A stretch of 64,000 nt of DNA from Isurus oxyrinchus (lineage: Eukaryota), in NCBI GenBank assembly GCA_026770705.1, contig JANJGN010000021.1:117986001-118050000 (forward strand). The letters are read 5' to 3'. Each line of letters starts with the position of its first letter. The first letter of the stretch is position 1. The notes beneath the pieces are model-generated. The model did not search any database, was not told the DNA's origin, and was given only the letters and a program-made list of their open reading frames with translations. Position numbers and translations under genes: made by a program. This document shows, piece after piece, positions 34,410-62,784 of this stretch.

Positions 34410-34446
<37 letters not shown>

Positions 34447-37400
34447 AGAGAGAGTGTCAGTGCGAGTGTNNNNNNNNNNNNNNNNNNNNNNNNNNNNNNN
34501 NNNNNNNNNNNNNNNNNNNNNNNNNNNNNNNNNNNNNNNNNNNNNNNNNNNNNNNNNNNNNNNNNNNNNNNNNNNNNNNNNNNNNNNNNNNNNNNNNNNN
34601 NNNNNNNNNNNNNNNNNNNNNNNNNNNNNNNNNNNNNNNNNNNNNNNNNNNNNNNNNNNNNNNNNNNNNNNNNNNNNNNNNNNNNNNNNNNNNNNNNNNN
34701 NNNNNNNNNNNNNNNNNNNNNNNNNNNNNNNNNNNNNNNNNNNNNNNNNNNNNNNNNNNNNNNNNNNNNNNNNNNNNNNNNNNNNNNNNNNNNNNNNNNN
34801 NNNNNNNNNNNNNNNNNNNNNNNNNNNNNNNNNNNNNNNNNNNNNNNNNNNNNNNNNNNNNNNNNNNNNNNNNNNNNNNNNNNNNNNNNNNNNNNNNNNN
34901 NNNNNNNNNNNNNNNNNNNNNNNNNNNNNNNNNNNNNNNNNNNNNNNNNNNNNTGTGAGAGAGTGTCAGTGTGAGCGTGTGTGTCAGTGTGAGTGTATGT
35001 GTAAGTGTGAGTGTGTGTGTGTGTGTGTCAGTGTGAGTGTGTGTGTGAGAGAGTGTGAGTGTGAGTGTGTGTGTGTCAGTGTGAGCGTGTGTGCGAGTGT
35101 GTTTGTGTGTGAGAATACGTGCGTGTGTGAGTGTGTGAGAGTGTGTGTGAAAGAGAGAGAAGAAGAGAGATCATGGCTGATTCTATCAAGCTTGCTTCAC
35201 AGGTGTGCAGAAGATGTGCGAAATATTTACAAAATTCTTTACTTGAGGAGAGACGTATTAGCATTGGAGGCATTTCAGAGAAGATTCACTAGATTGATTC
35301 TTTGGATGAATGAGTTTGTCTTACCAGGAAACGTTGAGCAGGTCATTGGAGTTTCGAAGAATGAAAGATTCTGAGGGGATTGACAGGGTGGGTGACAAGA
35401 GGAAGGCTTCCTCTTGTGGGGGATTCTAGGACTAGGGGCACAGTTTCAAAATAAGAGATCTCCCATAGAAGACGGAGATGAGGAGGAATCTTTTCTTTCA
35501 AAGGATCATTAATCTTGAGCATTCTCTTTCACAGAGAGCAGTGGAGGTCGGGACATTGAACATATTCGAGGCTCAGTTAGGGAGATTTTTGATCGACAAG
35601 GGAGTTGAGGGTTATGAGTGGGAGGCAGCCAAGAATTAGGAGTTAAAGCCACAATGAGATTGAAAGGTGGAGCAGGCTCAAGGGGCTGAATGGCCACCTT
35701 CTGCTTCTGGTTCTGATGGTCAGTGGCTCAGTGTCACCTCACTCTGATGAAGCAAGAAACTATATTCTCTGAACAGGGAGGATTGCTTTTTTCATTATGT
35801 TTAAACATTGTTTTACTGTCCGATTCTGGAGAAGGAATACATTGAGATGATAAGGAGGCAATAATCCCTCAGTTAGGTAGAGGGCCTTTAGCTTACTCCA
35901 ATTGTATTAGACACTTGAGGTTGCTTGTCGTCTCTGAGGAACTCTCCACTGGTACAATGATTTAATTGGAAGCTGTGACAAGAGTCATACAGTTTGTAGT
36001 TTCAGGTTCAGGGAGGAACCAACTAAAGTGTGTACAACTCTTAGCAGTTCATACTGAGGGAAGATACAGACTGTCTAGTGCCCTGGGACAAGAGGGCTTA
36101 AAAATACTGTCAAGATCAGGCGTGGTCTCGTGTGTCCCAACATGATAATTATCAGCTTGCTCAGTCCACGGACACAGTTAGTGAGATAGGAACCTTGTGG
36201 GACAAGTGTGGGACAAACGATTACTTAATCCAGTCACTTCTACGTAACAAGCGTTTAGCACTCGACTGGCATTTTGGAATCTGCTGTCTTACCTCTCACA
36301 TCGAAGAACATGCCAGGCTTCAGCTCCGAGGCCAGGCCCAAATCCAAGGGCAGTTCTCGCTCCTCCCCATTTTGGTAGGGGACTTGGCGAAGGAGCAGGA
36401 GAGCTGGATCCTGGGTAATGGAGTTGGGGAAGCTGCCCTTTCCACCGCCTTCCTCCACAAACCAGCACTCCACCAGCGTGCCAAGCTCCAACAAACTGTC
36501 GCGGCTCATCACTGTGAAGAGAAAGAGGTGGCGCTTGTCAACGTTAGTGAACAGGGTGGCAGTACCTGGAGGACTGTGTACAATTTTGGCCTCTCTATTT
36601 AAGGGGGTATTTGCATTGGAAGCAGTTCAGAGAAGGTTCACTCGGCTGATTCCTGGGATGACAGAGGTTGAGTAGGTTGGGCCAATACTCATTGGAGTTC
36701 AACAGAATGAGAGGGGATCTTATTGAAACACAGAAGGCCCTGGGGGGGGTTCACAGGGTTGGTGCTGAGAGGGTGTTTCCCCCCATGGGGAGGGGGGGAT
36801 TCTAGAACAAGGGGTACAGTTTCAGAATAAGAGGCCTCCCATTTAAGAGGGAAATGAGGAGGAATCTCTCTTCTCAGGGGGCTGTTAGTGTCTGGAATTC
36901 TCTCCCTCAGGGAACAGTGGAGACTGGGTCACTGAATATATTCAAGGCCGAGTTAGATAGATTTTTGATCGACGAGGGACTCGAGGGTTATGAGGGGCGG
37001 TGCAGACAGGAAAGTGGAGTTAAGGCCACAGTCAGATCAGCCATTATCTTAGTGAATGGAGGAGCAGACCCAAGGGGCCTACTCCTGCTCCTATCTTATG
37101 ATCATTGTACCAATTCTAATCTCGATTCAAAACGATTCCCTTCCTCATCTCCAAAGTGCAGTTTAAGCTGAAATGTGGTGCTTCCTCCCCATTGCCAGTG
37201 ATGGCTACACTCCCAGTGTCCAGTCCCGCAACCCTCCGAGATACCTGCGCTCCTCGAATTCTGGCCTATTGTACATCCTGCTTTAATCACTCCTCTGTGG
37301 GTGGCCACGCCTTCAGTTCCCTGGGCTCCAAGCTCTGGAATTCCCTCTCTAAACCTCTCTGCCTCTCTACCTCACTCTTTTAAAACTCTCCGGAAAACCA

Positions 37401-40400
37401 CCCTATTTCACCAGGCTTTTGGTCAGCTCACATAACATAGCCTCATGGGTCTCGGTGTCAGGTTATGTTTTATAAAGTCCCTGTGAAAAGCCTTGAGATG
37501 TTTTGATATGTTAAAGGCACTGTATATAACGCATATAAGATGTTAGTGATGTTATCGTCTAGTCAAACACCACCTGTACACATATTTCTGAAGAGAGACA
37601 TGTTGCAAAAGCCTCACAAGGTTGCCAGGTTTCAAACGATCACAACAGCTGGTACCACTGGGGAAGAGGCTGCTGATTGGTTAACATCAAGTCCAATCCC
37701 GCACTCTCGAGATTGTCCCGATACGTGTGAGGTGAGAAAGCTTTGGCAGCATGTTCTCCTTTCAGCAATATTCAAGATTGGTACTGTTTCTGCACAAGCA
37801 GATTAAACATGTTTCACACTGGAAACCCCATGTCCATTTTATAACGCTAATTCTCCATGTAATCATGTCACGCTTGAACCACGCCTTAATAGTTAAGGAC
37901 CAGCACTGCCACCACCGGTCAGACGGTCTCATTACAGGCTGACATGTGAAACACATCCAGAACTGTGAGTAACACTGTGGAATGCTGTCATAGGGCATGT
38001 TCATCACTTCAATGTGGCCAGAGGATGCCAAAAATAACTAGAACGAAATTGTGTGCATTAAGAGGTCATTGCTTACATCAGGAGTCTGCCGATGGCTCAA
38101 TATGGAGAGCAGGTCCAAGGAAGTGTGTCAGTATTTACAGGGGAGTCCCTGGGGAGTGTGTCAATATTTACAGGGGGTCCCCGGGGAGTGTGTCAGTATT
38201 TACAGGGGTCCCCCGGGAGTGTGTCAGTATTTACAGGGGGTCCCCGGGGAGTGTGTCAGTATTTACAGGGGAGTCCCCGGGGATTGTGTCAGTATTTACA
38301 GGGGAGTCCCCGGGGAGTGTGTCAGTATTTACAGGGTATCCCCGGGGAGTGTGTCAGTATTTACAGGGGTTCCCCGGGGAGTGTGTCAGTATTTACAGGG
38401 GGGTCCCCGGGGAGTGTGTCAGTATTTACAGGGGGTCCCCAGGGAGTGTGTATTTACAGGGGTCCCCGGGGAGTGTGTCAGTATTTACAGGGTATCCCCG
38501 GGGAGTGTGTCATTATTTACAGGGGTTCCCTGGGGAGTGTGTCAGTATTTACAGGGGGGTCGCCGGGAAGTGTGTCAGTATTTACAGGGGGTCCCCAGGG
38601 AGTGTGTCAGTATTTACAGGGGGTCCCCGGGGAGTGTGTCAGTATTTACATGGGGTCCCCAGGGAGTGTGTCAGTATTTACAGGGGGTCCCCGGGGAGTG
38701 GTCAGTATTTACAGGGGTTCCCCGGGGAGTGTGTCAATATTTACAGGGGAGTCCACGGGAAGTGTGTCAGTATTTACAGGGTGTCCCCGGGGAGTGTGTC
38801 AATATTTACAGGGGAGTCCCCGGGGAGTGTGTCAGTATTTACAGGGGGTCCCCAGGGAGTGTGTCAGTGTTTACAGGGGGTCCCTGGGGAGTGTGTCAGT
38901 ATTTACAGGGGGTCCCCGGGGAGTGTGTCAGTATTTACAGGAGGCCCCCAGGGAGTGTGTCAGTATTTACAGCGGGTCCCCGGGGAGTGTGTCAGTATTT
39001 ACAGGGGGTTCCTGGGCAGTGTGTCAGTATTTACAGCGGGTCCCCAGGGAGTGTGTCAGTATTTACAGGGGGTCCCCGGGGAGTGTGTCAGTATTTACAG
39101 GGGGTCCCCGGGGAGTGTGTCAGTATTTACAGGGGGTCCCCGGGCAGTGTGTCAGTACTTAGAGGGGTCCCGGGGAATGTGTCTGTATTTACAGGGGGTC
39201 CCGGGGAGTGTGTCAGTATTTACAGGGGGGACCACAGAGAATGTGTGAGTATTTACAGGGGGGTCCCCAGGGAGTGTGTCAGTGTTTACAGGGGGCCCCG
39301 GGGAGTGTCTCAGTATTTACAGGGCTCCCCGGGGAGTGTGTCAGTATTTAAATGGGGTCCCAGGGGAGTGTGTCAGTACTTACAGGGGGTCCCGGTGAGT
39401 GTGTCAGTATTTACAGGGGGTCCCAGGGGAGTGTGTCAGTATTTACAGGGGGGACCGCGGAGAATGAGTGAGTATTTACAGGGGGGTCCCCAGGGGGTAT
39501 GTCAGTTTTTACAGGGAGCCCCGGAGAGTGTCTGAGTAATTTACAGGGCTCCCCAGGGAGTGTGTCAGTATTTACATGGGGTCCCCGGGAAGTGTGTCAG
39601 TATTTACAGGGAGCCCCCGGGGAGTGTGTCAGTATGTACAGGGCGTTCCCGGGGAGTATATCAGTGTTTACAGGGGGCCCCCGGGGAGTGTGTCAGTATT
39701 TACAAGGGGTTCCCGGGGAGTGTGTCAGTATTTACAGGGGGGACCGCGGAAAATGTGTCAGTATTTACGGGGGGACCGCGGAGAATGTGTCAGTAATTAC
39801 AGGGGGGTCCCCGGGGTGTGTGTCAGTATTTATAGGGGGTCCTCGGGGAGTGTGTCAGTATTTACAGGGGGGGTCTCTGGGGAGTGTGTCAGTATTTACA
39901 GGGGGTCCCCGGGGAGTGTGTCAGTATTTACAGGGGGTCCCCGGGGAGTGTGTCAGTATCTACAGGGGGTCTCCGGGGAGTGTGTCAGTATTTACAGGGG
40001 GTCTCCGGGGAGTGTGTCAGTATTTACAGGGGATCCCTGCGGAGTGTGACAGTATTTACAGGGTATCCCCGGGGAGTGTGTCAGTAATTACATGGGGTCC
40101 GGGTGAGTGTGTCAATATTTACAGGGGCTTCCCCGGGGAGTGTGTCAGTATTTACAAAGGTTCCCAAGGAGTGTCTCGGTATTTTCACCGGTCTGCGGAG
40201 AGTCTCAGTATTTACAGGGGTCCCAGGGGAGTGTGTCAGTATTTACAGGGTGTTCCCGGGGTGTGTGTCAGTATTTACAGGGGGGTCCCCGGGGAGTGTG
40301 TCAGTGTTTACAGGGGGTCTCCGGCGAGTGTGTCAGTATTTACAGGGGGTCCCAGGGGAGAGTGTCAGTATTTACAGGGGGTCCCCGGGGAGTGTGTCAG

Positions 40401-43400
40401 TATTTACAGGGGGTCCCCGGGGAGCGTGTCAGTGTTTACAGGGGGTCTCCGGCGAGTGTGTCAGTATTTACAGGGGGTCCCAGGGGAGTGTGTCAGTATT
40501 TACAGGGGGGTCCCCGGGAAGTGTGTCAGTATTTACAGGGGGTCCCTGGGGAGTGTGTCAGTATTTACAGGGGGTCCCCAGGAAGTGTGTCAGTATTTAC
40601 AGGGGGTCCCAGGGGGTGTCTCGGTATTTACAGGGGGTCCCCAGGGAGTGTGTCAGTATTTACAGGGTGTCGCCGGGGAGTGTGTCAGTATTTACAGGGG
40701 GTCCCCGGGGCGTCTCAGTGTTGACAAACGTCCCGGGGAGTGTGTCAGTATTTAAAGGGGGTCCCCGAGGAGTGGGTCAGTACTTACAGGGGGTCCCGGT
40801 GAGTGTGTCAGTATTTACAGGGGGTCCCCAGGGAGTGTGTCAGTATTTACAGGGGGGTCCCTGGGGAGTGTGTCAGTATTTACAGGTGTCCCCGGGGCGT
40901 CTCAGTGTTGACACATGTCCCGGGGAGTGTGTCAGTATTTAAAGGGGGTCCCCGGGGAGTGTGTCAGTACTTACAGGGGGTCCCGGTGAGTGTGTCAGTA
41001 TTTACAGGGGGTCCCAGGGGAGTGTGTCAGTATTTACAGGGGGGACCGCGGAGAATGAGTGAGTATTTGCAGGGGGGTCCCCAGGGAGTATGTCAGTTTT
41101 TACAGGGGGCCCCGGGGAGTGTCTGAGTAATTTACAGGGCTCCCCAGGGAGTGTGTCAGTATTTACATGGGGTCCCCAGGAAGTGTGTCAGTATTTACAG
41201 GGAGCCCCCGGGGAGTCTGTCAGTATTTACAGGGCGTTCCCGGGGAGTATATCAGTGTTTACAGGGGGCCCCCGGGGAGTGTGTCAGTATTTACAGGGGG
41301 GTCCCCGGGGAGTGTGTCAGTATTTACAGGGGGTTCCTGGGGAGTGTGTCAGTATTTACAGGGGGGACCGCGGAAAATGTGTCAGTACTTATGGGGGGAC
41401 CGCGGAGAATGTGTCAGTAATTACAGGGGGGTCCCCAGGGAGTGTGTCAGTATTTATAGGGGGTCCTCGGGGAGTGTGTCAGTATTTACAGGGGGGGTCT
41501 CAGGGGAGTGTGTCAGTATTTACAGGGGGTCTCCGGGGAGTGTGTCAGTATTTAAAGGGGGTCCCCGGGGAGTGTGTCAGTATTTACAGGGGGTCTCCGT
41601 GGAGTGTGTCAGTATTTACAGGGGGTCCCCGGGGATTGTGTCATTATTTACAGGAGGTCCCCGGGGAGTGTGTCAGTATTTACAGGGGGGGCATCCCCGT
41701 GGAATGTGTCAGCATCTACGTGGGGTCCCCGGGAAGTGTGTCAGTATTAACAGGTGTCCCCGGGGATTGTGTCAGTATTTAGAGGGGGTCCCCGGGGAGT
41801 GTGTCAGTATTTACAGTGGGTCCCCGGGGAGTGTGTCAGTATTTACAGGGGGGTCCCCGGGAAGTGTGTCAGTATTTACAGGGCGTCCCCGGGGAGTGTG
41901 TCAGTATTTACAGGGGAGTCCCCGGGGAGTGTGTCAGTATTTACAGGGGGTCCCCCGGGAGTGTGTCAGTATTTACAGGGGGTCCCCGGGGAGTGTGTCA
42001 GTATTTACAGGGGGTCCCCGGGGAGTGTGTCAGTATTTACAGGGGGTCCCCGGGGAGTGTGTCAGTATTTACAGGGGGGGTCTCCGGGGAGTGTGTCAGT
42101 ATTTACAGGGGGAACCCGGGGAGTGTGTCAGTATTTACAGGGGGACCCCGGGGAGTGTGTCAGTATTTACAGGGGGTCCCCGGGGAGTGTGTCAGTATTT
42201 ACAGGGGGTCTCCAGGGAGTGTGTCAGTATTTACAGGTGGTCTCCGGGGAGTGTGTCAGTATTTAAATGGGGTCCCAGGGGAGTGTGTCAGTACGTACAG
42301 GGGCCCCAGGGGAGTGTGTCAGTGTTTACAGGGGGTCCCAGGGGAGTGTGTCAGTATTTAAATGGGGTCCCAGGGGAGTGTGTCAGTACGTACAGGGGGT
42401 CCCGGTGAGTGTGTCAGTATTTACAGGGTGTTCCCGGGGAGTGTGTCAGTATTTACAGGGTGTCCCCGGGGAGTGTGTCAATATTTACAGGGGAGTCCCC
42501 GGGGAGCGTGTCAGTGTTTACAGGGGGTCCCCGGAGAGTGTGTCAGTATTTACAGGGGGTCCCCGAGGAGTGTGTCAGTATTTACAGGGGGCCCCCAGGG
42601 AGTGTGTCAGTATTTACAGGGGGTCCCCAGGGAGTGTGTCAGTATTTACAGGGGTTTCCAGGGCAGTGTGTCAGTATTTACAGTGGGTCCCCAGGGAGTG
42701 TGTCAGTATTTACAGGGGGTCCCCGGAGAGTGTGTCAGTATTTACAGGGGGTCCCCGGGGAGTGTGTCAGTATTTACAGGGGGTCCCCGGGCAGTGTGTC
42801 AGTACTTAGAGGGGATCCCGGGGAATGTGACTGTATTTACAGGGGGACCCGGGGATTGTGTCAGTATTTACATGGGGGTCCCCGGGGAGTGTGTCAGTAT
42901 TTACAGGGGGTCCCGGGGAGTGTGTCAGTATTTACAGGGGGGACCGCAGAGAATGTGTGAGTATTTACAGGGGGGTCCCCAGGGAGTGTGTCAGTGTTTA
43001 CAGGGGGCCCCGGGGAGTGTCTCAGTATTTACAGGGCTCCCCGGGGAGTGTGTCAGTATTTAAATGGGGTCCCAGGGGAGTGTGTCAGTACTTACAGGGG
43101 GTCCCGGTGAGTGTGTCAGTATTTACAGGGGGTCCCATGGGAGTGTGTCAGTATTTACAGGGGGGACCGCGGAGAATGAGTGAGTATTTGCAGGGGGGTC
43201 CCCAGGGAGTATGTCAGTTTTTACAGGGGGCCCCGGGGAGTGTCTGAGTAATTTACAGGGCTCCCCAGGGAGTGTGTCAGTATTTACATGGGGTCCCCGG
43301 GAAGTGTGTCAGTATTTACAGGGTGTCCCCGGGGAGTGTGTCAGTATTTACAGGGCGTTCCCGGGGAGTATATCAGTGTTTACAGGGGGCCCCCGGGGAG

Positions 43401-46400
43401 TGTGTCAGTATTTACAGGGGGTTCCCGGGGAGTGTGTCAGTATTTACAGGGGGTCCCCGGGGAGTGTGTCAGTATTTACAGGGGGGACCGCGGAAAATGT
43501 GTCAGTATTTACGGGGGGACTGCGGAGAATGTGTCAGTAATTACAGGGGGGTCCCCGGGGAGTGTGTCAGTATTTATAGGGGGTCCTCGGGGAGTGTGTC
43601 AGTATTTACAGGGGGGGTCTCCGGGGAGTGTGTCAGTATTTACAGGGGGTCCTCGGGGAGTGTGTCAGTATTTACAGGGGGTCCCCGGGGAGTGTGTCAG
43701 TATTTACAGGGGGTCCCCGGGGAGTGTGTCAGTATTTACAGGGGGTCTCCGGGGAGTGTGTCAGTATTTACAGGGGGTCTCCGGGGAGTGTGTCAGTATT
43801 TACAGGGGGTCCCCGGGGAGTGTGTCAGTATTTAAATGGGGTCCCCGGGGAGTGTGTCAGTATTTACAGGGGGTCTCCGTGGAGTGTGTCAGTATTTACA
43901 GGGGGTCCCCGGGGATTGTGTCATTATTTACAGGGGGTCCCCGGGAAGTGTGTCAGTATTTACAGGGGGGGCATCCCCGTGGGGTGTGTCAGCATCTACA
44001 GGGGGTCCCCGGGAAGTGTGTCAGTATTAACAGGTGTCCCCGGGGATTGTGTCAGTATTTACAGGGGTCCCCGGGGAGTGTGTCAGTATTTGCAGGGTGT
44101 CCCCGGGGAGTGTGTCAGTATTTACAGGGGGTCCCCGGGGAGTGTGTCAGTAATTACAGGGGGTCCCCGGGGAGTGTGTCAGTATTTACAGGGTATCCCC
44201 GGGGAGTGTGTCAGTAATTACATGGGGTCCGGGTGAGTGTGTCAGTATTTACAAAGGCTCCCAAGGAGTGTCTCGGTATTTTCACGGGTCTGCGGAGAGT
44301 CTCAGTATTTACAGGGGGGTCCCCGGGGAGTGTGTCAGTATTTACAGGGCGTCCCTGGGGAGTGTGTCAGTATTTACAGGGGGTCCCCGGGGGAGTGTGT
44401 CAGTATTTACAGGGCGTCCCTGGGGAGTGTGTCAGTATTTACAGGGGGTCCCCGGGGGAGTGTGTCAGTATTTACAGGGGGTCCCGGGGGAGTGTGTCAG
44501 TATTTACAGGGGGTCCCCAGGAAGTGTGTCAGTATTTACAGGGGGTCCCAGGGGGTGTCTCGGTATTTACAGGGGGTCCCCAGGAAGTGTGTCAGTATTT
44601 ACAGGGGGTCCCAGGGGGTGTCTCGGTATTTACAGGGGGTCCCCAGGAAGTGTGTCAGTATTTACAGGGGGTCCCAGGGGGTGTCTCGGTATTTACAGGG
44701 GGTCCCCAGGAAGTGTGTCAGTATTTACAGGGGGTCCCAGGGGGTGTCTCGGTATTTACAGGGGGTCCCCAGGGAGTGTGTCAGTATTTACAAGGGGGTC
44801 CCTGGGGAGTGTGTCAGTATTTACAGGGGGGTCCCCGGGGCGTCTCAGTGTTGACACACGTCCCGGGGAGTGTGTCAGTATTTACAGGGGGTCCCCGGGG
44901 AGTGTGTCAGTGTTTACCGGTGTCCCTGGGCTGTGTCACATTCTTGTTCTAGCCATCAGAATGAGCTGTGTAATCAGTGTTTATCTGAGGACTGGGGTTG
45001 AAAGTGAAGGTCGATGATGAATGTTCAGCTCCCACTGCTTTATATTTCTGCCTGCCTTCTAATCTGCTCATTTTTAAAATAAAGTTGCCCATCTGGTACT
45101 TCAGGAGTTGTTAGCACACTTACTGTTCAAGATTGTAGCTCATGCCCGCACATTTTTCAACTGAATATGTTGTATATCAATTTGGGGGAGCCCAGTGAAT
45201 TTGTTGCTGTGCTATACCTTGATCTGACCTCCATTATTGTGTCCTGTCACATGGAGGATGTTATCTGGCAATGGCACAGAGGAGTTTCACTGGGTTAAGT
45301 CATAGTTTAAAATGTCTTATCAAGGAGCTGGGACTGTCTTCTCTGCAGGAGCGCAGACTATGGGGTAGTCTGACTGAGGGTTATAAAGATGTTGAAGGGA
45401 ATATATTGTGTCTGAGCTGACAGTATACTCCAATTAATTAGTTTCCGGGTTACAATTATAAATGATCAGATCGATGTCGCCATCCCCTTTAACTGTCTGT
45501 GTGAGGCATGTAACTCACCCTCCCCTTTAACAAGCTGTTTGCACCGGTTGTTTCCTTTCACCCTCCCCTTTAAGCAGAATGCTGTTAGTTGCAGCTCTGG
45601 TACGCGCCCGCTGATGGGCTGCACACTGTTGCAGCCTTTTTGTTTAATCCCAGCCTCACCACACTGAAGGAAAGCTCTCGCCAGGCCCTTTGCAGTGTTG
45701 CGCTTGCAGCCTGACAATATCTCAGCCTCTGCCTCTCACAAGGGCAGCCGGCTTTGATCAACAACGCTTGAGGTGACTAACCTATGGCGGGCGGGGTTAG
45801 AAGGTTTCTCTTTCAGATCAGGGAAGCAGCTAAAAATCAGCAGCGAGACTGGTTAGGAGTGAAAACAGGAAGCAGTTTTATTTGCACAAAGGCCACTTTC
45901 GAAATCTGAATCTTTCTCTCTCTCTCTCTTCCCACAAAAGACTGTGGATGCTGGGAAGTCAAATATGACTGAGATCGATAGATCTCTTTGTGAGGTCAAG
46001 GTTTTAAACAGAGTTGCCAACTCCGGCTGGATGAATTTCTGGAGGGTTTATCACATGACTTCCTCCCTCCAATAGCCTCACCCACCTCCCCCAACCCCCC
46101 CCCCCCCCCCCCCCAAACTACTGTCATTGGTCACACAACATGCCGATCATTGATGTCCTGCCCTCCACTGGTCAATTGGAAAGCCAATTGCAAAAGCTCG
46201 TCCTCAGTCATCCTGGGCGACTCAAACTGTGGGTCAAAAAGCCTTTTCTTTCCTGTCAGCAGCAGTTTTATAATTAATACACAAAACAGTAGAAAGAACT
46301 TTTACTTTTTTCTAAATGTCCCCATGAACTTTCTCCCTGGAAATGTATTCATGGTGACTCCAGGGCAATCCTGGAGGGTTGGCAACCCTATAATATCGAG

Positions 46401-51229: not shown

Positions 51230-53200
51230 TCCCTAATTACCCCTTCAGAAGGTGGTGGTGAGCTGCCTTCTCAAACCGCTGCAGTCCATGTGGTGTAGGT
51301 ACACCCACAGTGCTGTTAGGGAGGGAGTTCCAGGATTTTGTGTATGTGGTGTAGGTACACCCACAGTGCTGTTCGGGAGGGAGTTCCAGGATTTTGTCCA
51401 TGTGGTGTAGGTACACCCACAGTGCTGTTAGGGAGGGAGTTCCAGGATTTTGTCCATGTGGTATAGGTACACCCACAGTGCTGTTAGGGAGGGAGTTCCA
51501 GGATTTTGTCCATGTGGTGTAGGTACACCCACAGTGCTGTTTGGGAGGGAGTTCCAGGATTTTGTCCGTGTGCTGTAGGTACACCCACAGTGCTGTTAGG
51601 GAGGGAGTTCCAGGATTTTGTCCATGTGGTGTAGGTACACCCACAGTGCTGTTAGGGAGGGAGTTCCAGGATTTTGTCAGTGTGGTGTAGGTACACCCAC
51701 AGTGCTGTTAGGGAGCGAGTTGCAGGATTTTGTCCATGTGGTGTAGGTACACCCACAGTGCTGTTAGGGAGGGAGTTCCAGGATTTTGTCCATGTGGTGT
51801 AGGTACACCCACAGTGCTGTTAGGGAGGGAGTTCCAGGATTTTGTCCATGTGGTGTAGGTACACCCACAGAGTTGTTAGGGAGGGAGTTCCAGGATTTTG
51901 TCCGTGTGGTGTAGGTACACCCACAGTGCTGTTAGGGAGGGAGTTCCAGGATTTTGTCCGTGTGGTGTAGGTACACCTACAGTGCTGTTAGGGAGGGAGT
52001 TCCAGGATTTTGTCCGTGTGGTGTAGGTACACCCACAGCGCTGTTAGGGAGGGAGTTCCAGGATTTTGTCCGTGTGGTGTAGGTACACCCATAGTGCTGT
52101 TAGGGAGGGAGTTCCAGGATTTTGTCCATGCGGAGTAGGTACACTCACAGTGCTGTTAGGGAGGGAGTTCCAGGATTTTGTCCGTGTGGTGTAGGTACAC
52201 CCACAGTGCTGTTAGGGAGGGAGTTCCAGGATTTTGTCCATGTGGTGTAGGTACACCCACAGTGCTGTTAGGGAGGGAGTTCCAGGATTTTGTCTGTGTG
52301 GTGTAGGTACACCCACAGTTGCTGTTAGGGAGGGAGTTCCAGGATTTTGTCTGTGTGCTGTAGGTACACCCACAGTGCTGTTAGGGAGGGTGTTCCAGGA
52401 TTTTGTCCATGTGGTGTAGGTCCACCCACAGCGCTGTTAGGGAGGGAGTTCCAGGATTTTGTCCATGTGGTGTAGGTACACCCACAGTGCTGTTAGGGAG
52501 GGACTTCCAGGATTTTGTCCGTGTGGTGTAGGTACACCCACAGTGCTGTTAGGGAGGGAGTTCCAGGATTTTGTCCATGTGGTGTAGGTACACCCACAGT
52601 GCTGTTAGGGAGGGACTTCCAGGATTTTGTCCATGTGGTGTAGGTACACCCACAGTGCTGTTAGGGAGGGAGATCCAGGATTTTGTCCATGTGGTGTAGG
52701 TACACCCACAGTGCTGTTAGGGAGGGAGTTCCAGGATTTTGTCCATGTGGTGTAGGTACACCCACAGTGCTGTTAGGGAGGGAGTTCCAGGATTTTGACC
52801 TAGTGACAGTGAAGGAACGGTGATATATTTCCAAGTCAGGATGGTGAGTGACTTGGAGGGAACGTCCAGGTGGTGATGTTCCCATGTGTCTGCTGCCCTT
52901 GTCCTTCTAGATGGTAGAGGTCACAGGTTTGGAAGGTGCTGTCGAAGGAGCCTTGGTGAGTTGCTGCAGTGCATCTTGTAGATGGTACACACACTGCTGC
53001 TACTGTGTGTCAGTGGTGGAGGGAGTGAATGTTTGTGGATGTGGTGCCAATCAAGCGGGGCTGCTTTGTCCTGGATCGTGTCGAGTTTCTTGAGTGTTGT
53101 GGGAGCTGCATTCATCCAGGCAAGTGGGGAGTATTCCATCTCACTCCTGACTTGTGCCTTGTAGATGGTGGACAGGCTTTGGGGAGTCAGGAGGTGACTC
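51230..53200 (-). mobile_element. LINE (HER1-like) 3' portion with the same internal 56-bp VNTR (51285-52797, about 27 copies)
   Basis: Reverse complement of roughly 28350-30950; [18 protein letters not shown]...; ends [14 protein letters not shown]. Confidence 0.92.
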
Positions 53201-54679: not shown

Positions 54680-54770
54680 CTACCGTAACTGCCTGTTCCT
54701 GGCTGTACACCTGGGCGGTCCGAGGCTCAGGTACCAGATCTCGTTGTGGCGGTTGAACAATGTCAGAGGC
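54680..54770 (-). CDS. SOUL/HEBP2-like last coding exon (PLTLFNRHNEIWYL...QLR*)
   Basis: Acceptor gtcctgcgtacag|G; contains the NRHNEIW SOUL C-terminal signature; TAG at 54680-54682. Confidence 0.88.
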
Positions 54771-57700
54771 CTGTACGCAGGACATTGCCATCCCGAATAA
54801 ACAAACAAAAGATCAAATAGAATTATTAGTCAGCAGCCTAGACTCCCTCTTCAATTAGTTCAGCAACTTTCCTATCAACCGTGATCTGAGTTCAGAGAAG
54901 TGAGTGGGGAGAGGGATCAGAAATCGACAGCCCTAAGATGGGGTAAGAGCAGGGAATTACCTATACTGTGGACTGGGTGACACCTTCGGTCTGTCTGCAA
55001 GAATGATCCAAACCTCCCTGTCGCTTGCCATTTTAACACTCCACCCTGCTCTCTTGCCCACATGTCTGTCCTTGGCTTGCTGCATTGTTCCAGTGAAGCC
55101 CAACGCAAACTGGAGGAACAACACCTCATCTTCCGACTAGGCACTTTACAGCCTTCCGGACTGAAATAAAAGCAAAAAACTGCGGATGCTGGAAATCCAA
55201 AACAAAAAAAACAGAATTACCTGGAAAAACTCAGCAGGTCTGGCAGCATCGGCGGAGAAGAAAAGAGTTGACGTTTCGAGTCCTCATGACCCTTCAACAG
55301 AACTTTTTCCATCCATTGTTTTATCTCTACCTTTTAGCTTATTTTGATCCCTTCACCCCACACCACCCCCACTAGGGCTATCTGTACCTTCACCCCCACC
55401 CCACCCCCACTAGGGCTATCTGTACCTTCACCCCACCCCACCCCCACTAGGGCTATCTGTACCTTCACCCCACACCACCCCCACTAGGGCTATCTGTACC
55501 TTCACCCCACCCCACCCCCAGTAGGGCTATCTGTACCTTCACCCCCACCCCACCCCCACTAGGGCTACCTGTACCTTCCCCCCACCCCACCCCCACTAGG
55601 ACTATCTGTACCTTCACCCCCACCCCACCCCCACTAGGGCTATCTGTACCTTCACCCCACCCCACCCCCACTAGGGCTATCTGTACCTTCACCCCACCCC
55701 ACCCCCACTAGGGCTATCTGTACCTTCACCCCACCCCACCCCCACCCCCACTAGGGCTATCTGTACCTTCACCCCACCCCACCCCCACTAGGGCTATCTG
55801 TACCTTCACCCCACCCCCACCCACACTAGGTCTATCTGTACCTTGCTCGTCCTGCTTTCTACCCTTAATTAGCACATTCCTTAGATAATATCACCACCTT
55901 CAACACCTCTTTGTCCTTTGTCTGTGACATCTTTTGGTTATCTCCACCAATCACTGGCCCTCCATCCAGTTCTACCTGTTCCACCCCCTTAAACCAGCTT
56001 ATATTTCACCCCTCTTCTATTTTTACTTAGTTCTGTTAAAGGATCATTTGGACTCGAAACGTTAACTGTGTCCCTCTCCGCAGATGCTGCCAGACCTGCT
56101 GAGTTTTTCCAGGTAGTTTTATTTTTCTTCTGGACTGAATATTGAGTTCAACAACTTTAGATCGTGAACTCTCTTCTCCACCATCACCCCCTTTTTTATG
56201 CCCTTTTTTCTAATAATTTATATATTTTTAAATAAATTTTTCTTTTCCCACCTATTTCTATTATTATTTTTAAATGTATTTCCATCCATTGTTTTATCTC
56301 CACCTTTTAGCCGTTTTCAATTCCTTCCCCCTACCCCACCCCCACTAGGGCTATCTGTACCTTCACCCCACCCCACCCCCACTAGGGCTATCTGTACCTT
56401 CACCCCACCCCACCCCCACTAGGGCTATCTGTACCTTCACCCTACCCCACCCCCACTAGGGCTTTCTGTACCTTCCCCCTACCCCACCCCCACTAGGGCT
56501 ATCTGTACCTTCACCCCACCCCACCCCCACTAGGGCTATCTGTACCTTCACCCCACCCCACCCCCACTAGGGCTATCTGTACCTTCACCCCACCCCACCC
56601 CCACTAGGGCTATCTGTACCTTCACCCCACCCCCACTCGGGCTATCTGTACCTTCCCCCTACCCCACCCCCACTAGGGCTATCTGTACCTTCCACCCACC
56701 CCACCCCCACTAGGGCTATCTGTACCTTCACCCCACCCCACCCTCACTAGGGCTATCTGTACCTTCACCCCACCCCACCCCCACTAGGGCTATCTGTACC
56801 TTCACCCCACCCCCACTCGGGCTATCTGTACCTTCCCCCTACCCCACCCCCACTAGGACTATCTGTACCTTCCCCCCACCCCACCCCCACTTGGGCTATC
56901 TGTACCTTCACCCCACCCCACCCCCACTAGGGCTATCTGTACCTTCCCCCCACCCCACCCCCACTAGGGCTATCTGTACCTTCACCCCACCCCACCCCCA
57001 CTAGGGCTATCTGTACCTTCACCCCACCCCACCCCCACTAGGGCTATCTGTACCTTCACCCCACCCCACCCCCACTAGGGCTATCTGTACCTTCACCCCA
57101 CCCCCACTCGGGCTATCTGTACCTTCCCCCTACCCCACCCCCACTAGGGCTATCTGTACCTTCCACCCACCCCACCCCCACTAGGGCTATCTGTACCTTC
57201 ACCCCACCCCCACTCGGGCTATCTGTACCTTCCCCCTACCCCACGCCCACTAGGGCTATCTGTACCTTCCACCCACCCCACCCCCACTAGGGCTATCTGT
57301 ACCTTCACCCCACCCCCACTCGGGCTATCTGTACCTTCCCCCTACCCCACCCCCACTAGGACTATCTGTACCTTCCCCCCACCCCACCCCCACTTGGGCT
57401 ATCTGTACCTTCACCCCACCCCACCCCCACTAGGGCTATCTGTACCTTCCCCCTACCCCACCCCCACTAGGGCTATCTGTACCTTCCACCCACCCCACCC
57501 CCACTAGGGCTATCTGTACCTTCACCCCACCCCCACTCGGGCTATCTGTACCTTCCCCCTACCCCACCCCCACTAGGGCTATCTGTACCTTCCACCCACC
57601 CCACCCCCACTAGGGCTATCTGTACCTTCACCCCACCCCCACTCGGGCTATCTGTACCTTCCCCCTACCCCACCCCCACTAGGACTATCTGTACCTTCCC

Positions 57701-60700
57701 CCCACCCCACCCCCACTTGGGCTATCTGTACCTTCACCCCACCCCACCCCCACTAGGGCTATCTGTACCTTCCCCCCACCCCACCCCCACTAGGGCTATC
57801 TGTACCTTCACCCCACCCCACCCCCACTAGGGCTATCTGTACCTTCACCCCACCCCACCCCCACTAGGGCTATCTGTACCTTCACCCCCACCTCACCCCC
57901 ACTAGGGCTATCTGTACCTTCACCCTACCCCACTCCCACTAGGGCTATCTGTACCTTCACCCCACTCCCACCCCCACTAGGGCTATCTGTACCTTCACCC
58001 CACCCCACCCCCACTAGGGCTATCTGTACATTCACCACACCCCACCCCCACTAGGGCTATCTGTACCTTCCCCCCACCCCACCCTCACTAGGGCTATCTG
58101 TACCTTCACCCCACCCCACCCCCACTAGGGCTATCTGTACCTTCCCCCCACACCACCCCCACTAGGGCTATCTGTAACTTCACCCCACCCCACCCCCACT
58201 AGGTCTATCTGTACCTTCACCCCACCCCACCCCCACTAGGGCTATCTGTACCTTCACCCCACCCCACCCCCACTAGGTCTATCTGTACCTTGCTCATCCT
58301 GCTTTCCACCCTTAATGTCACCACTAGCACATCCTTTAGCTGATATCGCCACCGTCAACACCCCTTGGTCTTTTCGTCTAGTTTTTCCAGCAGTTTTATG
58401 TTTTTGTTTCAGATCCCCAGCGCCCGCAGTATTTGGCTTCTAGCTGTAATGTGGGTAAGGTTGTGCTGCGGTTACAGACTGGATCCAAACGGAACATGAG
58501 CTCAAATCCCACCGGGGCAGTTTGAGAATTTGAAATCAAGATTTTTGTCAAAAAAACAGTAGGAAAATGGCGATTGATGAAAGTGATTTTGTTGAAAGTG
58601 ATTGTGGGATCGTCATTAAAAACCCAGGAGAAAGGAAACTCACCATTCCTCACCCTGGTTGTGTATATAGGTCCTTCCAGCCCCACACAGCCAGCAGGCT
58701 CATCAGCACTCTCCCAGGGTAACTGGGGATGGACAAGTAATGCCAGGCAGTCAGTATCAACCCACCACCCCCCCACCACAAGCCCAGGAACCGATCCTCA
58801 AAGAAATGGTGTTTGACGGTAGTGAGTCTGAACATCCGGGGTGCACCCCCCAACCTGTAATTCATTAGGGTAACTATTTTCTTTTAGGGAGGCTGGGGCG
58901 TGGGGTTATTCGGGAGGTGGGGGGGTTGTCTGGGGGAGGGTTGGGGAAGGGGGCTAGCACCAGGCTATGCCTGAATTAGTCTGTCTACAGAGGGACAGTG
59001 AGAGGGTGTTCACACAGTATGTGTTCCAATATCCTGGCCTGCGCCCCAGATCATGTTCCCATACCCTGTACCCAATCTATTTCCCCATACCCTGTACCCC
59101 AATCTATTTCCCCATACCCTGTACCCCGATCTATTTCCCCATACCCTGTACCCCGATCTATTTCCCCATACCCTGTACCCCGATCTATTTCCCCATACCC
59201 TGTACCCCGATCTATGTCCCCATACCCTGTACCCCGATCTATGTCCCCATACCCTGTACCCCGATCTATGTCCCCATACCCTGTACCCCGATCTATCTCC
59301 TCATACCCTGTACGCCGATCTATGTCCCCATACCCTGTACCCTGATCTATGTCCCCATACCCTGTACCCTGATCTATGTCCCCATACCCTGTACCCTGAT
59401 CCATGTCCCCATACCCTGTACCCTGATCCATGTCCCCATACCCTGTACCCCAATCTATGTCCCCATACCCTGTACCCCAATCTATGTCCCCATACCCTGT
59501 ACCCCGATCTATGTCCCCATACCCTGTACCCCAATCTAAGTCCCCATACCCTGTACCCCGATCTATGTCCCCATACCCTGTACCCCAATCTAAGTCCCCA
59601 TACCCTGTATCCCAATCTAAGTCCCCATACCCTGTACCCCGATCTATGTCCCCATACCCTGTACCCCAATCTAAGTCCCCATACTCTGTACCCCGATCTA
59701 TGTCCCCACAGCCTGTACCCCGATCTATGTCCTCATACCCTGTACCCCGATCTATGTCCCCATGCCCTGTACACCGATCTAAGTCCCCATACACTGTACC
59801 CCGATCTATCTCCTCATACCCTGTACCCCAATCTATCTCCTCATACCCTGTACCCCGATCTATGTCCCCATACCCTGTACCCCGATCTATCTCCTCATAC
59901 CCTGTACCCCGATCTATGTCCCCATACCCTGTACCCCGATCTATGTCCTCATACCCTATACCCCGATCCATGTCCCCATACCCTGTACCCTGATCTATGT
60001 CCCCATACCCTGTACCCCGATCTATGTCCCCATACCCTGTACCCTGATCTATGTCCCCATACCCTGTACCCCGATCTATGTCCCCATACCCTGTACCCCG
60101 ATCTATATCCCCATACCCTGTACCCCAATCTAAGTCCCCATACCCTGTACCCCGATCTATGTCCTCATACCCTGTACCCCGATCTATGTCCCCATACCCT
60201 TTACCCCGATCTATGTCCCCATACCCTGTACCCCGATCTATGTCCCCATACCCATTGTATTCTGCACTGTAGAAGCGATCCTGCAGAAACACATCCCTTT
60301 TACGAAGCAGGTCCTCAAACATGTCCTGTGATTTTTGCCGCAGAGATGTGATCCAGCCTCCAAACGACTTCACGAAGATGGTCATTGGGGGCATCCTTCT
60401 TAAGAATAACTGTAACGGAAAACATAGGGTTTCTTGAACTCTGTCTCTCCCAGGAAGATGTGACCCTACACTGTATCGCTTCTATTTTGGGAGTGTGAAA
60501 AGCTTTGCTCTTCACAGACACCCTTCAAATAAGAACCATTCCCGGCAGCCTGGTCTCTGTCCCAGCACCGGGAATCTAATGACTGCATCTTGGATGAGTA
60601 AGTGTCAACCAAAAGGTGTGGCCTTTCCTGGTGTGTGTGAGAGCCCAGCACAATAGGCCAAGCACTGGGGCTGCCGGGCAGGTAACTGTACCCTCGGAGG

Positions 60701-62619
60701 GACAGCACATCCATAATAGAGGGAATATCCTGGGGAACAGAGGGATGGGAATGTCCCTATGTGTGGGGTGTGTGGGGGAGGGGAATGTCCCTATGTGTGG
60801 GGGAGGGGAATGTCCCTATGTGTGGGGGAAGGGAATGTCCCTATGTGTGGGGTGTGTGGGGGAGGGGAATGTCCCTATGTGCGGGGTGTGTGGGGGAGGG
60901 GAATGTCCCTGTGTGTGGGGTGTGTGGGGGAGGGGAATGTCCCTGTGTGTGGGGTGTGTGGGGGAGGGGAATGTCCCTGTGTGTGGGGGAGGAGAATGTC
61001 CCTATGTGTGGGGTGTATGGGGGAGGGGAATGTCCCTGTGTGTGGGGGAGGGGAATGTCCCTGTGTGTGGGGGAGGAGAATGTCCCTGTGTGTGGGGGAG
61101 GGGAATGTCCCTATGTGTGGGGTGTGTGGGGGAGGGGAACGTCCCTATGTGTGGGGGAGGGGAATGTCCCTGTGTGTGGGGTGTGTGGGGGAGGGGAATG
61201 TCCCTATGTGTGGGGTGTGTGGAGGAGGGGAATGTCCCTATGTGTGGGGGAGGGGAACGTCCCTGTGTGTGGGGGAGGAGAATGTCCCTGTGTGTGGGGG
61301 AGGGGAATGTCCCTATGTGTGGGGTGTGTGGGGGAGGGGAACGTCCCTATGTGTGGGGGAGGGGAATGTCCCTGTGTGTGGGGTGTGTGGGGGAGGGGAA
61401 TGTCCCTATGTGTGGGGTGTGTGGAGGAGGGGAATGTCCCTATGTGTGGGGGAGGGGAACGTCCCTATGTGTGGGGGAGGGGAATGTCCCTGTGTGTGGG
61501 GTGTGTGGGGGAGGGGAATGTCCCTGTGTGTGGGGTGTGTGGGGGGGGGAATGTCCCTATGTGTGGGGTGTGTGGGGGAGGAGAATGTCCCTGTGTGTGG
61601 GGTGTGTGGGGGAGGGGAACGTCCCTGTGGGTAGTGGGTGTATATGGGAGGGGAATGTTCTGAATAGATGGAATGGGATTTGGAAGGACTGAAAGTTCCC
61701 TTTGGGTGTTCCGCTTTAGGATGGAGTCCTTTAATTCTGCGACACCGGGGATCAATGAGAATGGTCCTTATTCTTGGTGTGCTTATAGATCTGGGAAGTG
61801 ATTAGCAGTGTGGATAGGAGATGGAGAGGGAGACGGAGAGGGAGAAAGAGCAAGTCGGAGAGGGAGAAAGAGAGGGATAAAGGGGGACAGAGATGGCGAG
61901 AGGGGACAGAGTTGTGGAGGGGGGACAGAAAGCAGACAGAGAGGGAGATGGAGATGGAAAGGGAGACAGAGGGCGAGCGGGACAGGGAGGGACAGCAGGA
62001 CAGAGAGGGATATGGAGATGTAGGGGTGAAAGAGAAGGAAAGGAAGAGGGAAGGCTTGACGTTTGGATTCCCACAGACCCTTCACAGGGTCTGCAGGTGG
62101 TTAGTATGAAGACAGAGCACTCCTTGTGAGGTCTGAGGGGCACAGAGAAATACTTGCTGGGTCCAGGGGGAGGGGGGAGGGCAGAGTCCAGGTCGTAGGA
62201 CATCATTGCTGCATTCAGACGTGGGTGGATAAAAGTCCAAGCCTATTCAGGTTCCACTATTACCTCGACTTGCCCCATCCAGCCCAACGCCCCAGGGGAT
62301 TCACTGTGAACACCCTCTAAACTAATCATCAGGAGCACATTGGACACTTGTCAGTCAATGTCACCAATAAAGATCTTCAGTTGCCTGGTGTGGACACCAG
62401 TTCATGTGCGGAGAGGATACAGGCAGTAAGTAACCCCCAGAAGCTGATGAACAGGGGGATCAGTTACTGGAGAACCCATACTCACCATTATATCTCTGGG
62501 ATATGGGGGATTGGTGAAAAATCTTCTGGGAAGCACCAAATATACATTTGTTGCTTTGAGCTCCCCATTGATGTCCATGTAGGTGGTGATGAGAGGGGCA
62601 GTTCTCTCAATCTGTATTC
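54680..62619 (-). CDS. SOUL/HEBP family heme-binding protein (HEBP2-like), 3' part: exons 62486-62619, 60252-60409, 54680-54770; 5' exons lie beyond the window
   Basis: Spliced peptide GIQIERTAPLIT...NVYLVLPRRFFTNPPYPRDIM|LFLRRMPPMTIFVKSFGGW...RFYSAEYNG|PLTLFNRHNEIWYLSLGPPRCTARNRQLR* carries SOUL motifs (TAP, PPxP, FGGW, Y-x-x-P, NRHNEIW); GT-AG introns in phases 0 and 2. Confidence 0.88.
55340..55845. repeat. 37-bp minisatellite (TAGGGCTATCTGTACCTTCACCCCACCCCACCCCCAC), first array
   Basis: Tandem repeats inside the inserted Penelope-like pLTR. Confidence 0.95.
56325..58290. repeat. 37-bp minisatellite with the same unit, second array
   Basis: Tandem repeats inside the host Penelope-like pLTR, with 32/37-bp variants. 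Confidence 0.95.
59055..60253 (-). repeat. 27-bp minisatellite (GGGTATGGGGACATAGATCGGGGTACA), about 44 copies, starting at the SOUL exon donor
   Basis: Tandem 27-mers that read (GYGDIDRGT)n in the SOUL frame. Confidence 0.97.
60252..60409 (-). CDS. SOUL/HEBP2-like penultimate exon (LFLRRMPPMTIFVKSFGGW...YSAEYNG)
   Basis: Acceptor ttttccgttacag|TTA, donor GG|gtatgg, 158 nt. Confidence 0.88.
60745..61660. repeat. 25/35-bp G-rich minisatellite (GGGGAATGTCCCTATGTGTGGGG[TGTGTGGGGG]AG) in a SOUL intron
   Basis: Tandem repeats with two interspersed unit lengths. Confidence 0.93.
62486..62619 (-). CDS. SOUL/HEBP2-like internal exon (GIQIERTAP...PPYPRDIM)
   Basis: Acceptor cttcctgtttctgcag|GA, donor ATG|gtgagt, 134 nt. 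Confidence 0.88.
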
Positions 62620-62784
62620 CTGCAGAAACAGGAAGAAAAGTTATCAGCTCCATGTAAACTAGCTCCATGTGGACCCCAGCAGACCCAGCCACAAAGAGAT
62701 AGAATTAGGACGTTTTAAACTGTTTGCATCTTGTTTGTAAAGAGAATACTACCAAAAAAATCCACTCATTTGGCTTAGTTTGTT

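What the first reader, a model, noticed from the sequence alone, without database searches (positions are those of the whole stretch)
59051..60253. A minisatellite that is an in-frame tandem amplification of a 5' splice site in the SOUL/HEBP gene
Seen: the penultimate SOUL exon ends AAT GG|gtatggggacatagatcggggtaca, and the intron begins with about 44 copies of a 27-nt unit. Most copies regenerate the donor (ACAGG|GTATGG or GTATGA). The unit length is a multiple of 3, each donor copy sits in the same phase (2) as the first, and the frame is stop-free for about 400 codons ((GYGDIDRGT)n). Inference: splicing from any downstream donor to the last exon would give an in-frame SOUL protein with n x 9 extra residues before PLTLFNRHNEIW, i.e. 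a ladder of up to about 44 isoforms whose range depends on VNTR allele length. Intron retention would instead replace the C-terminus with a Gly/Tyr/Asp-rich low-complexity tail. If only the first donor is used, strong suppression of dozens of equivalent sites needs explaining.
Basis: partly seen in the sequence, partly recalled or inferred. Interest (0 to 1): 0.8.

Follow-up and report, generated by a model that had tools for sequence, protein, structure and literature searches.

The report
Splice-donor minisatellite in shark HEBP2-like intron
The last intron of a shark heme-binding-protein gene starts with about 44 tandem copies of its own splice-donor sequence, a repeat type already known from several human genes, and the transcripts available here use only the first copy.

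Summary
A 27-nt minisatellite (window 59045-60253, 44.9 copies, 93% matches, no indels) begins 2 nt inside the penultimate exon of a HEBP2-like (SOUL) gene on the minus strand. It repeats the donor in the same phase: 39 of the 43 downstream in-register sites keep AGG|GTATG[G/A].

The proposed ladder of isoforms is not supported. In 3 of 4 runs laid (3 studies, 2 coded organisms), one contig per run covers the exon and continues directly into the last exon from the first donor. No contig crosses into the array or joins a repeat to the last exon. Contigs drop rare variants, so low-level use is not excluded.

None of 8 annotated elasmobranch orthologues has an insert at AEYNG|PLT. Variants among the copies show no coding constraint: 2 synonymous and 16 nonsynonymous types, with CpG decay commonest.

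The arrangement is a known class. Human F7 IVS7, 6-16, CBS, LMNB2 and PDGF have boundary-spanning minisatellites in which only the first donor, or the first three, are used (PMC1557585). Tandem arrays fill 55% of this window. The scan has already noted three junction-derived donor arrays elsewhere in this genome, which I did not check.

Verdict: a new member of a known kind, of low interest.

The parts
59045..60253 (-). 27-nt minisatellite, about 44.9 copies. The minus-strand unit reads G Y G D I D R G T in the gene frame. The first unit spans the exon-intron boundary.
   Evidence: TRF; 43 in-register matches against 0 in shuffles; per-copy table.
60252..60409 (-). Penultimate exon (exon 3) of the HEBP2-like/SOUL gene: 158 nt, starts in phase 0 and ends in phase 2.
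   Evidence: Pfam SOUL positions 104-158, E 7.4e-4, 20 bits, below the 27-bit cut-off for this 52-aa piece alone. 100% identical to the Carcharodon carcharias HEBP2-like protein over this exon. Contigs in X1, X6 and X7 end exactly at both exon edges.
60246..60254 (-). Authentic 5' splice site TGG|GTATGG (positions -3 to +6), the only donor seen in use.
   Evidence: Loose ends before 60251 in X1, X6 and X7 read as the reverse complement of the start of the last exon.
54771..60251 (-). Last intron, 5481 nt. It holds the 27-nt array and two 37-nt arrays. On the transcribed strand it has 342 G runs of 3 or more against 83 such C runs.
54680..54770 (-). Coding part of the last exon: the third base of the Gly codon, then PLTLFNRHNEIWYLSLGPPRCTARNRQLR and the stop TAG. 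The acceptor is ...gcgtacag|G.
   Evidence: Sequence; tblastn with P0001-P0003; loose-end letters of the spliced contigs.
62483..62620 (-). Exon 2 of the same gene (tblastn range; the true edges are a few bases inside). Exon 1 is not in the window.
   Evidence: tblastn. The loose end behind 60410 in X1 and X7 reads as the end of this exon...NPPYPRDIM.
55350..58291 (-). Two arrays of a 37-nt unit in the same intron, at 55350-55844 and 56323-58291. They are G-rich on the transcribed strand. Context only; they are not at an exon edge.
   Evidence: TRF.

Best explanation
This is a boundary-spanning intronic minisatellite. A 27-bp segment, made of the last 2 bases of exon 3 and the first 25 bases of the last intron of a shark HEBP2-like gene, was duplicated. 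Slippage or unequal exchange then amplified it to about 44 copies, so the donor is reiterated in phase.

The splicing machinery uses only the most upstream donor, the one that directly follows the exon. The downstream copies are silent pseudo-sites that drift as non-coding DNA. The in-frame period (27 = 9 x 3) and the open frame are by-products of the unit's sequence, not signs of coding use.

By analogy with human F7 IVS7, the pseudo-sites are probably functional but never compete, because selection runs 5' to 3' from the exon (oriented scanning or exon definition). The three G runs in each unit may add to this, since they lie downstream of the first donor but upstream of every later one.

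Shown here: the anatomy, the use of the first donor in the contigs, and the lack of coding constraint in the copies. Inferred: the origin by duplication and the mechanism of silencing.
For: Anatomy. The exon-side edge is sharp at 60253, and the distal edge has two decayed copies with three 1-nt indels.

Usage. X1 has an 889-nt contig, X6 a 180-nt contig and X7 a 1082-nt contig. Each covers 60251-60410, and its loose end before 60251 reads as the start of the last exon. X1 and X7 also continue upstream into exon 2. The bins 60173-60226 have depth 0 in X1, X6 and X7, so no contig crosses the first donor into the array.

Orthologues: 8 of 8 annotated elasmobranch proteins align without a gap across AEYNG|PLT.

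No constraint in the copies: of 18 variant types in 43 copies, 2 are synonymous and 16 nonsynonymous, against 26% synonymous expected. Types are spread 5/8/5 over the three codon positions. The commonest are the CpG transitions R>W (9 copies) and R>Q (6 copies). 6 of the 18 types fall in unit positions 1-8, which hold donor positions -2 to +6.

Precedent: PMC1557585. PMC1326234 passages state that GGG motifs downstream of a 5' splice site aid intron definition, and that hnRNP F/H sites promoted use of the distal 5' splice site.

Background: 35,327 of the window's 64,000 bases lie in 16 tandem arrays.
Against: All RNA evidence comes from assembled contigs, which drop rare variants and cannot show absence (the tool's own warning).

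The runs are only guessed to be RNA. The spliced contigs argue for RNA, but a processed copy in DNA is not formally excluded.

Short repeat-only contigs (57 and 84 nt, depths 15.6 and 7.2) are present in X7, so some array sequence is in that run. They could come from pre-mRNA, DNA carry-over or a rare isoform.

The downstream donors are not intrinsically weaker. They differ from the first only at -3 (A instead of T) within the 9-mer, and their predicted U1 duplex energies are within 0.3-0.8 kcal/mol.

In human 6-16 and CBS, two pseudo-sites are used besides the authentic donor (PMC1557585 introduction), so some use here would not be unprecedented.

Copy number and polymorphism of the array were not verified independently.
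Confidence: 0.75

Rival explanations
1. A low-level ladder. The first one or two pseudo-donors are used constitutively at a low rate, as in human 6-16 and CBS. This would give HEBP2-like proteins with 9 or 18 extra residues (GYGDIDRGT) before PLTLFNRHNEIW. These isoforms are in frame and so would not be removed by nonsense-mediated decay.
For: The pseudo-donors match the authentic site at positions -2 to +6 and have the better base at -3. All are in phase. PMC1557585's introduction reports such use in 6-16 and CBS. Contigs cannot exclude rare forms.
Against: None of the 3 spliced contigs uses a downstream donor, and no loose end in the array reads into the last exon. None of 8 annotated orthologues has an insert. 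The first downstream copies show no extra conservation, and the array as a whole shows no coding constraint.
Confidence: 0.17
2. Intron retention. A share of transcripts reads through the first donor and replaces the C-terminal strand with a roughly 400-residue Gly/Tyr/Asp-rich tail.
For: The frame is open through the array to 59051. Repeat-only contigs exist in X7 at low depth.
Against: No contig crosses 60252/60251 into the array in X1, X6 or X7 (bins 60173-60226 have depth 0). The open frame is trivial, since 5 of 6 frames of the unit lack stops. No database protein of 83-264 aa carries the repeat: only 3 hits among 3859 candidates, all canonical. R>W and R>Q variants are common.
Confidence: 0.03
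3. Assembly artefact. The array, or its length, results from mis-assembly of a repeat-rich region.
For: 55% of the window is tandem repeat, and such regions are hard to assemble. The copy number was not checked against reads.
Against: Independent runs X2 and X7 hold contigs of 34-84 nt made of the same unit, with 1-5 differences. The array has an ordered map of interspersed variants and a decayed distal edge, as natural minisatellites do. The exon, the donor and the first unit are intact.
Confidence: 0.05

Closest known systems
Human F7 intron 7 minisatellite (37 bp, 5-9 copies), per Borensztajn et al. 2006, PLoS Genet, PMC1557585
   Same: The first monomer spans the exon-intron boundary: 4 exon bases in F7, 2 here. 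The authentic donor is a moderate TGG|gt... site followed by identical pseudo-sites. Only the most upstream site is seen in use.
   Different: About 44 copies here against 5-9. The 27-nt unit is a multiple of 3, so every pseudo-site is in frame, whereas 37 is not. The gene and the lineage differ (shark). The functionality of the pseudo-sites and the scanning mechanism were shown by mutagenesis in F7 and are only inferred here.
[quoted passage not shown] 1995, Nucleic Acids Res), as described in the introduction of PMC1557585. The paper itself is not held.
   Same: A minisatellite at an exon-intron boundary reiterates the donor many times (25 pseudo-sites).
   Different: [quoted passage not shown] Here no such use was seen at contig level. 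I recall the 6-16 unit length as 12 nt; I did not see it in any call.
Human CBS intron 13, LMNB2 and PDGF intron 4 boundary minisatellites, as listed in the introduction of PMC1557585
   Same: The same architecture. In LMNB2 (100 bp, 10-15 copies) and PDGF (81 bp, 16-18 copies) only the authentic donor is used, as seen here.
   Different: In CBS two pseudo-sites are used. Unit lengths and copy numbers differ. All these examples are mammalian.
Junction-derived donor arrays noted earlier by this scan in MHC class I genes of the same genome (s1-864008, s1-869914, s1-868611)
   Same: Tandem arrays built from an exon end plus its 5' splice site, on the same genome piece.
   Different: They lie in other genes (class I), with other units (for example 26 nt) and much larger copy numbers (66 to about 1,200). 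These are AI notes that I did not check.

Membership tests
Boundary-spanning minisatellite with reiterated 5' splice sites (F7 IVS7 type) | A tandem array whose first monomer contains the exon-intron junction | tested here: met
   The array starts at 60253 and the exon ends at 60252, so the first unit holds 2 exon and 25 intron bases. The 27 nt upstream match the unit at 6 of 27 positions.
Boundary-spanning minisatellite with reiterated 5' splice sites (F7 IVS7 type) | The authentic donor sequence is repeated in the following monomers (pseudo-sites) | tested here: met
   39 of 43 downstream in-register sites read AGG|GTATG[G/A], against TGG|GTATGG for the authentic site.
Boundary-spanning minisatellite with reiterated 5' splice sites (F7 IVS7 type) | Only the most upstream donor (or the first two or three) is used in mature transcripts | tested here: met
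   All 3 contigs that reach the exon's 3' end (X1, X6, X7; 3 studies) continue from the first donor into the last exon. The fourth run, X2, had no exon contig. This is contig level only, so rare use is not excluded.
Boundary-spanning minisatellite with reiterated 5' splice sites (F7 IVS7 type) | Pseudo-sites are functional when the upstream site is inactivated | not testable with these tools
   This needs a minigene with the first donor mutated.
Boundary-spanning minisatellite with reiterated 5' splice sites (F7 IVS7 type) | Copy number is polymorphic (VNTR) | not tested
   Read laying has one counted call, and short contigs cannot span 1.2 kb of repeat. Only a base variant inside the array (G>T at 60053 in X2 and X7) was seen.
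SOUL / heme-binding protein family (Pfam PF04832), HEBP2-like | Sequence match to the SOUL domain and to annotated orthologues | tested here: met
   Exon 3 alone matches SOUL profile positions 104-158 with E 7.4e-4 and 20 bits, below the 27-bit cut-off for this short piece. The three exons are 96-100% identical to C. carcharias 'heme-binding protein 2-like' (P0001, precomputed PF04832). Heme binding was not tested.

The most novel reading that the evidence does not exclude
The array may not be fully silent. As in human 6-16 and CBS, the first pseudo-donors could be used at a low or tissue-specific rate. That would give in-frame HEBP2-like isoforms with 9 or 18 extra residues before the last strand, with VNTR allele structure setting which sites are available.

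More broadly, this scan has now noted four arrays built on a splice junction on this one genome piece. Donor-proximal G-rich intron starts might therefore be preferred seeds of minisatellites in this shark, which would be a mutational bias rather than chance in a repeat-rich region.
Probability: 0.15. Interest if true: 0.45.

Novelty: new member of a known kind. Interest (0 to 1): 0.22.

Why it matters
It matters little on its own. It extends to a cartilaginous fish a curiosity known from a handful of human genes, and it has many in-frame pseudo-donors (39 intact). [quoted passage not shown] For annotation, it warns that gene predictors and readers may over-call isoforms or coding repeats in the minisatellite-rich MHC-linked regions of shark genomes.

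Tried and rejected
Junctions were therefore read from loose ends on the donor side only.

Only protein-level comparison was done.

3. Donor strength. No MaxEnt tables were at hand. ViennaRNA duplex energies against the U1 5' end gave -5.9 kcal/mol for the authentic site and -5.6 or -6.2 for most copies. These values do not discriminate, and the duplex register was not constrained, so the measure is weak.

4. RNA accessibility. In exon 3 plus 9 units, the mean unpaired probability of positions -3 to +6 was 0.41 for the first donor and 0.46-0.58 for the next seven. This gives no structural explanation for the first-donor preference. The run with G-quadruplexes allowed is not interpretable as accessibility.

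5. G-quadruplex motifs. There are 23 with loops of 1-9 nt and 0 with loops of 1-7 nt. This is suggestive only.

6. The open reading frame as evidence of coding was rejected. 5 of 6 frames of the unit lack stops, and synonymous changes show no excess.

7. I looked for further boundary arrays at the neighbouring tapasin region using an ORF list. Nothing clear came of it and I dropped it.

8. Literature. One search found PMC1557585, and one search found nothing closer. One search, on shark tandem repeats, gave only general context. In passages of the preprint 10.1101/2025.06.08.657570, elasmobranch genomes are described as having regions 50-100% occupied by simple tandem repeats. I found no paper on this shark gene's array in these four searches; supplementary files were not consulted.

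9. A third word search with the 447-aa read-through ORF and the large representative search were not run. The word database returned only NCBI models for this gene and no transcriptome fragments, so a blank would say little.

Exons were searched separately. The other queries were a contiguous genomic read-through and natural database proteins.

Full report
**What is there**

On the minus strand, window 60252-60409 is a 158-nt exon. It reads LFLRRMPPMTIFVKSFGGWITSLRQKSQDMFEDLLRKRDVFLQDRFYSAEYN plus two bases of a Gly codon. On its own it matches Pfam SOUL positions 104-158 with E 7.4e-4 and 20 bits, below the 27-bit cut-off for such a short piece. It is 100% identical to the corresponding part of 'heme-binding protein 2-like' of Carcharodon carcharias (P0001, 210 aa).

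A tblastn of P0001-P0003 places exon 2 at about 62483-62620 and the last coding exon at 54683-54769. Exon 1 is not in the window. The window differs from P0001 by one residue in exon 2 and by several at the C-terminus. It is therefore a close relative or another individual, and I did not resolve which.

The last exon starts at 54770, after ...gcgtacag|G. It reads PLTLFNRHNEIWYLSLGPPRCTARNRQLR and then a stop. The intron between the two exons is 5481 nt.

**The array**

Tandem Repeats Finder reports one array at 59045-60253 with period 27, 44.9 copies, 93% matches and no indels. The consensus unit matches 43 times with up to 3 mismatches. All matches are head to tail, and 100 shuffles gave none.

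The array starts at 60253, two bases inside the exon. The 27 nt before that match the unit at 6 of 27 positions, which is chance level. The far end has two decayed copies with three 1-nt indels, after which similarity ends.

There are 44 in-phase donor positions. One is the authentic TGG|GTATGG. Then come 32 AGG|GTATGG, 7 AGG|GTATGA and 4 damaged sites (copies 17, 18, 20, 21). A 45th copy is out of register. Exon lengths of 158+27k are all 2 mod 3.

The 447-aa open frame is not evidence of coding. Read directly, five of the six frames of the unit have no stop, and a 432-aa ORF runs through the array on the opposite strand.

**Is the ladder made?**

The look-up of sequencing runs gave only runs kept as Logan contigs.

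In X1 and X6 (coded organism A) and X7 (coded organism B), one contig each covers 60251-60410. The contigs are 889, 180 and 1082 nt long. Beyond 60251 each continues with letters that are the reverse complement of the first bases of the last exon (compare). In X1 and X7 the contig also continues upstream with the end of exon 2.

No contig in these runs crosses from the exon into the array: bins 60173-60226 have depth 0. No loose end inside the array reads into the last exon.

X2 had no exon contig. It held only short repeat contigs and, with 2.9 million records for 150 million letters, looks like low-coverage DNA. X7 also holds two repeat-only contigs (57 and 84 nt; depths 15.6 and 7.2, against 1491 for the exon contig). 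The tool warns that these depths are poor measures.

In summary, all three spliced contigs use the first donor. Because contigs drop rare variants, this shows what the main form is. It does not show that minor forms are absent.

**Independent lines**

A word search with the contiguous read-through (exon 3 plus 11 units, 151 aa) found 3 proteins among 3859 candidates. All were canonical HEBP2-like proteins aligned over the exon part only, and none carried the repeat.

A search with P0001 found 8 elasmobranch proteins. They come from Carcharodon, Scyliorhinus, Mustelus, Heterodontus, Stegostoma, Hemiscyllium, Narcine and Pristis. All align without a gap across AEYNG|PLT. The junction is therefore old, and no annotated model uses an extra unit. 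The database returned only NCBI models, so it is no test for rare transcript forms.

Within the array, the 43 in-register copies carry 50 mismatches of 18 types. Of these types, 2 are synonymous and 16 nonsynonymous in the gene frame, against 26% synonymous expected. They are spread 5/8/5 over the codon positions. The most frequent are the two CpG transitions of the CGG codon: R>W in 9 copies and R>Q in 6. Six of the 18 types fall in unit positions 1-8, which hold donor positions -2 to +6, close to the 5.3 expected. The copies therefore drift as methylated non-coding DNA, with no protection of either the peptide or the pseudo-donors.

**Why only the first donor?**

The pseudo-sites are not weaker. 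Within the 9-mer they differ only at -3 (A instead of T), and their duplex energies with the U1 5' end are about equal (a weak measure that uses a recalled motif). Predicted RNA accessibility does not favour the first site.

The situation is a published one. Borensztajn et al. [quoted passage not shown] The examples are:

- Human F7 IVS7: 37 bp, 5-9 copies, with 4 exon and 33 intron bases in the first monomer.
- 6-16: 25 pseudo-sites, with the authentic donor plus two pseudo-sites in use.
- CBS IVS13: 15-20 repeats, with two pseudo-sites in use.
- LMNB2: 100 bp, 10-15 copies, with only the authentic donor in use.
- PDGF intron 4: 81 bp, 16-18 copies, with only the authentic donor in use.

With 50 constructs they showed that the F7 pseudo-sites are functional but never compete. 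[quoted passage not shown] Use falls and exon skipping rises as the first usable site moves away from the exon. They call this 5'-3' oriented scanning and note an overlap with exon definition. F7's donor TGG|gtgggt is of the same moderate type as TGG|GTATGG here.

I take this as the most likely mechanism in the shark, by analogy. A possible contributor is the G-run content. Each unit has three runs of G3 or longer: 123 in the array, 15 in the first 150 intron bases and 1 in the exon. Passages of PMC1326234 state that GGG motifs downstream of a 5' splice site aid intron definition, and that hnRNP F/H sites promoted use of the distal 5' splice site. Only the first donor has all the G runs downstream of it and none upstream. 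This is inference, not tested.

**How surprising is it?**

The window is a thicket of minisatellites. 35,327 of its 64,000 bases lie in 16 arrays with period of at least 10 and at least 4 copies. The same intron has two further arrays (37-nt unit) and the previous intron has another. Passages of a Squalomix preprint describe elasmobranch genome regions that are 50-100% simple tandem repeat (10.1101/2025.06.08.657570). In such DNA, a duplication that happens to include an exon end is not unexpected.

The scan's own notes list three more junction-derived donor arrays in MHC class I genes on the same genome piece (s1-864008, s1-869914, s1-868611). They have 66 to about 1,200 copies. I did not check these notes. 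They make this case less singular, and they raise the open question of whether donors are preferred seeds.

**Verdict**

The structural reading, an in-frame amplification of the donor, is right. The functional reading, a ladder of isoforms or retention, is not supported by the evidence obtainable here, and the apparent paradox has a known answer.

This is a new member of a known kind. It is notable only for its number of intact in-frame pseudo-donors (39) and for being in a shark. Read-level junction counts, a minigene and the orthologous introns would settle what remains open.

Noticed in passing
window 1-64000: 35,327 of 64,000 bases (55%) lie in 16 tandem arrays with period of at least 10 and at least 4 copies. 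They include a 15.3-kb array at 1-15299, a 6.8-kb array of a 32-nt unit at 38122-44917, and two arrays of the same 56-nt unit in opposite orientation at 28754-30884 and 51284-52797.
   Followed up: partly
window 54771-60251 (minus strand): The last intron is strongly G-rich on the transcribed strand: 342 runs of G3 or longer against 83 of C3 or longer. Its two 37-nt arrays also carry G4-G5 runs. The 27-nt array holds 23 G-quadruplex-type motifs if loops up to 9 nt are allowed.
   Followed up: partly
window 59045-60253 and 54771-54777 (minus strand): Each array unit also contains GTACAG|G, the same 7 letters as the true acceptor of this intron (gcgtacag|G), directly overlapping the pseudo-donor (read). 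The units lack a pyrimidine tract, so use as acceptors seems unlikely.
   Followed up: no
P0001-P0008 (orthologues of the window's gene): These HEBP2-like proteins start with a hydrophobic leader (MLLVLVVTLHLLSQSVLAQ in P0001) and have four invariant cysteines: C27, C33, C40 and C202. This looks like a secreted, disulfide-bonded SOUL protein, encoded next to tapasin according to the scan's note on this window. The signal-peptide reading is my impression and was not tested.
   Followed up: no
window 60053 and 60347: Runs of coded organism B differ from the window at two places: G>T inside the array (X2 and X7) and T>C in exon 3 (X7). Coded organism A (X1, X6) is identical over exon 3. The window's exons 2 and 4 differ from the C. 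carcharias protein P0001, so the window's exact species or individual is unresolved.
   Followed up: partly
window 33871-33987 and 34963-35149: Short arrays of GT-rich units containing GTGAGT lie directly beside the masked N stretches at 33708-34953. I did not fill or look up the masked parts.
   Followed up: no
window 60742-61658: Intron 2 of the same gene holds a 0.9-kb array of 25/34-nt units that is C-rich on the transcribed strand. It lies 330 nt upstream of exon 3's acceptor and is not at an exon edge.
   Followed up: no
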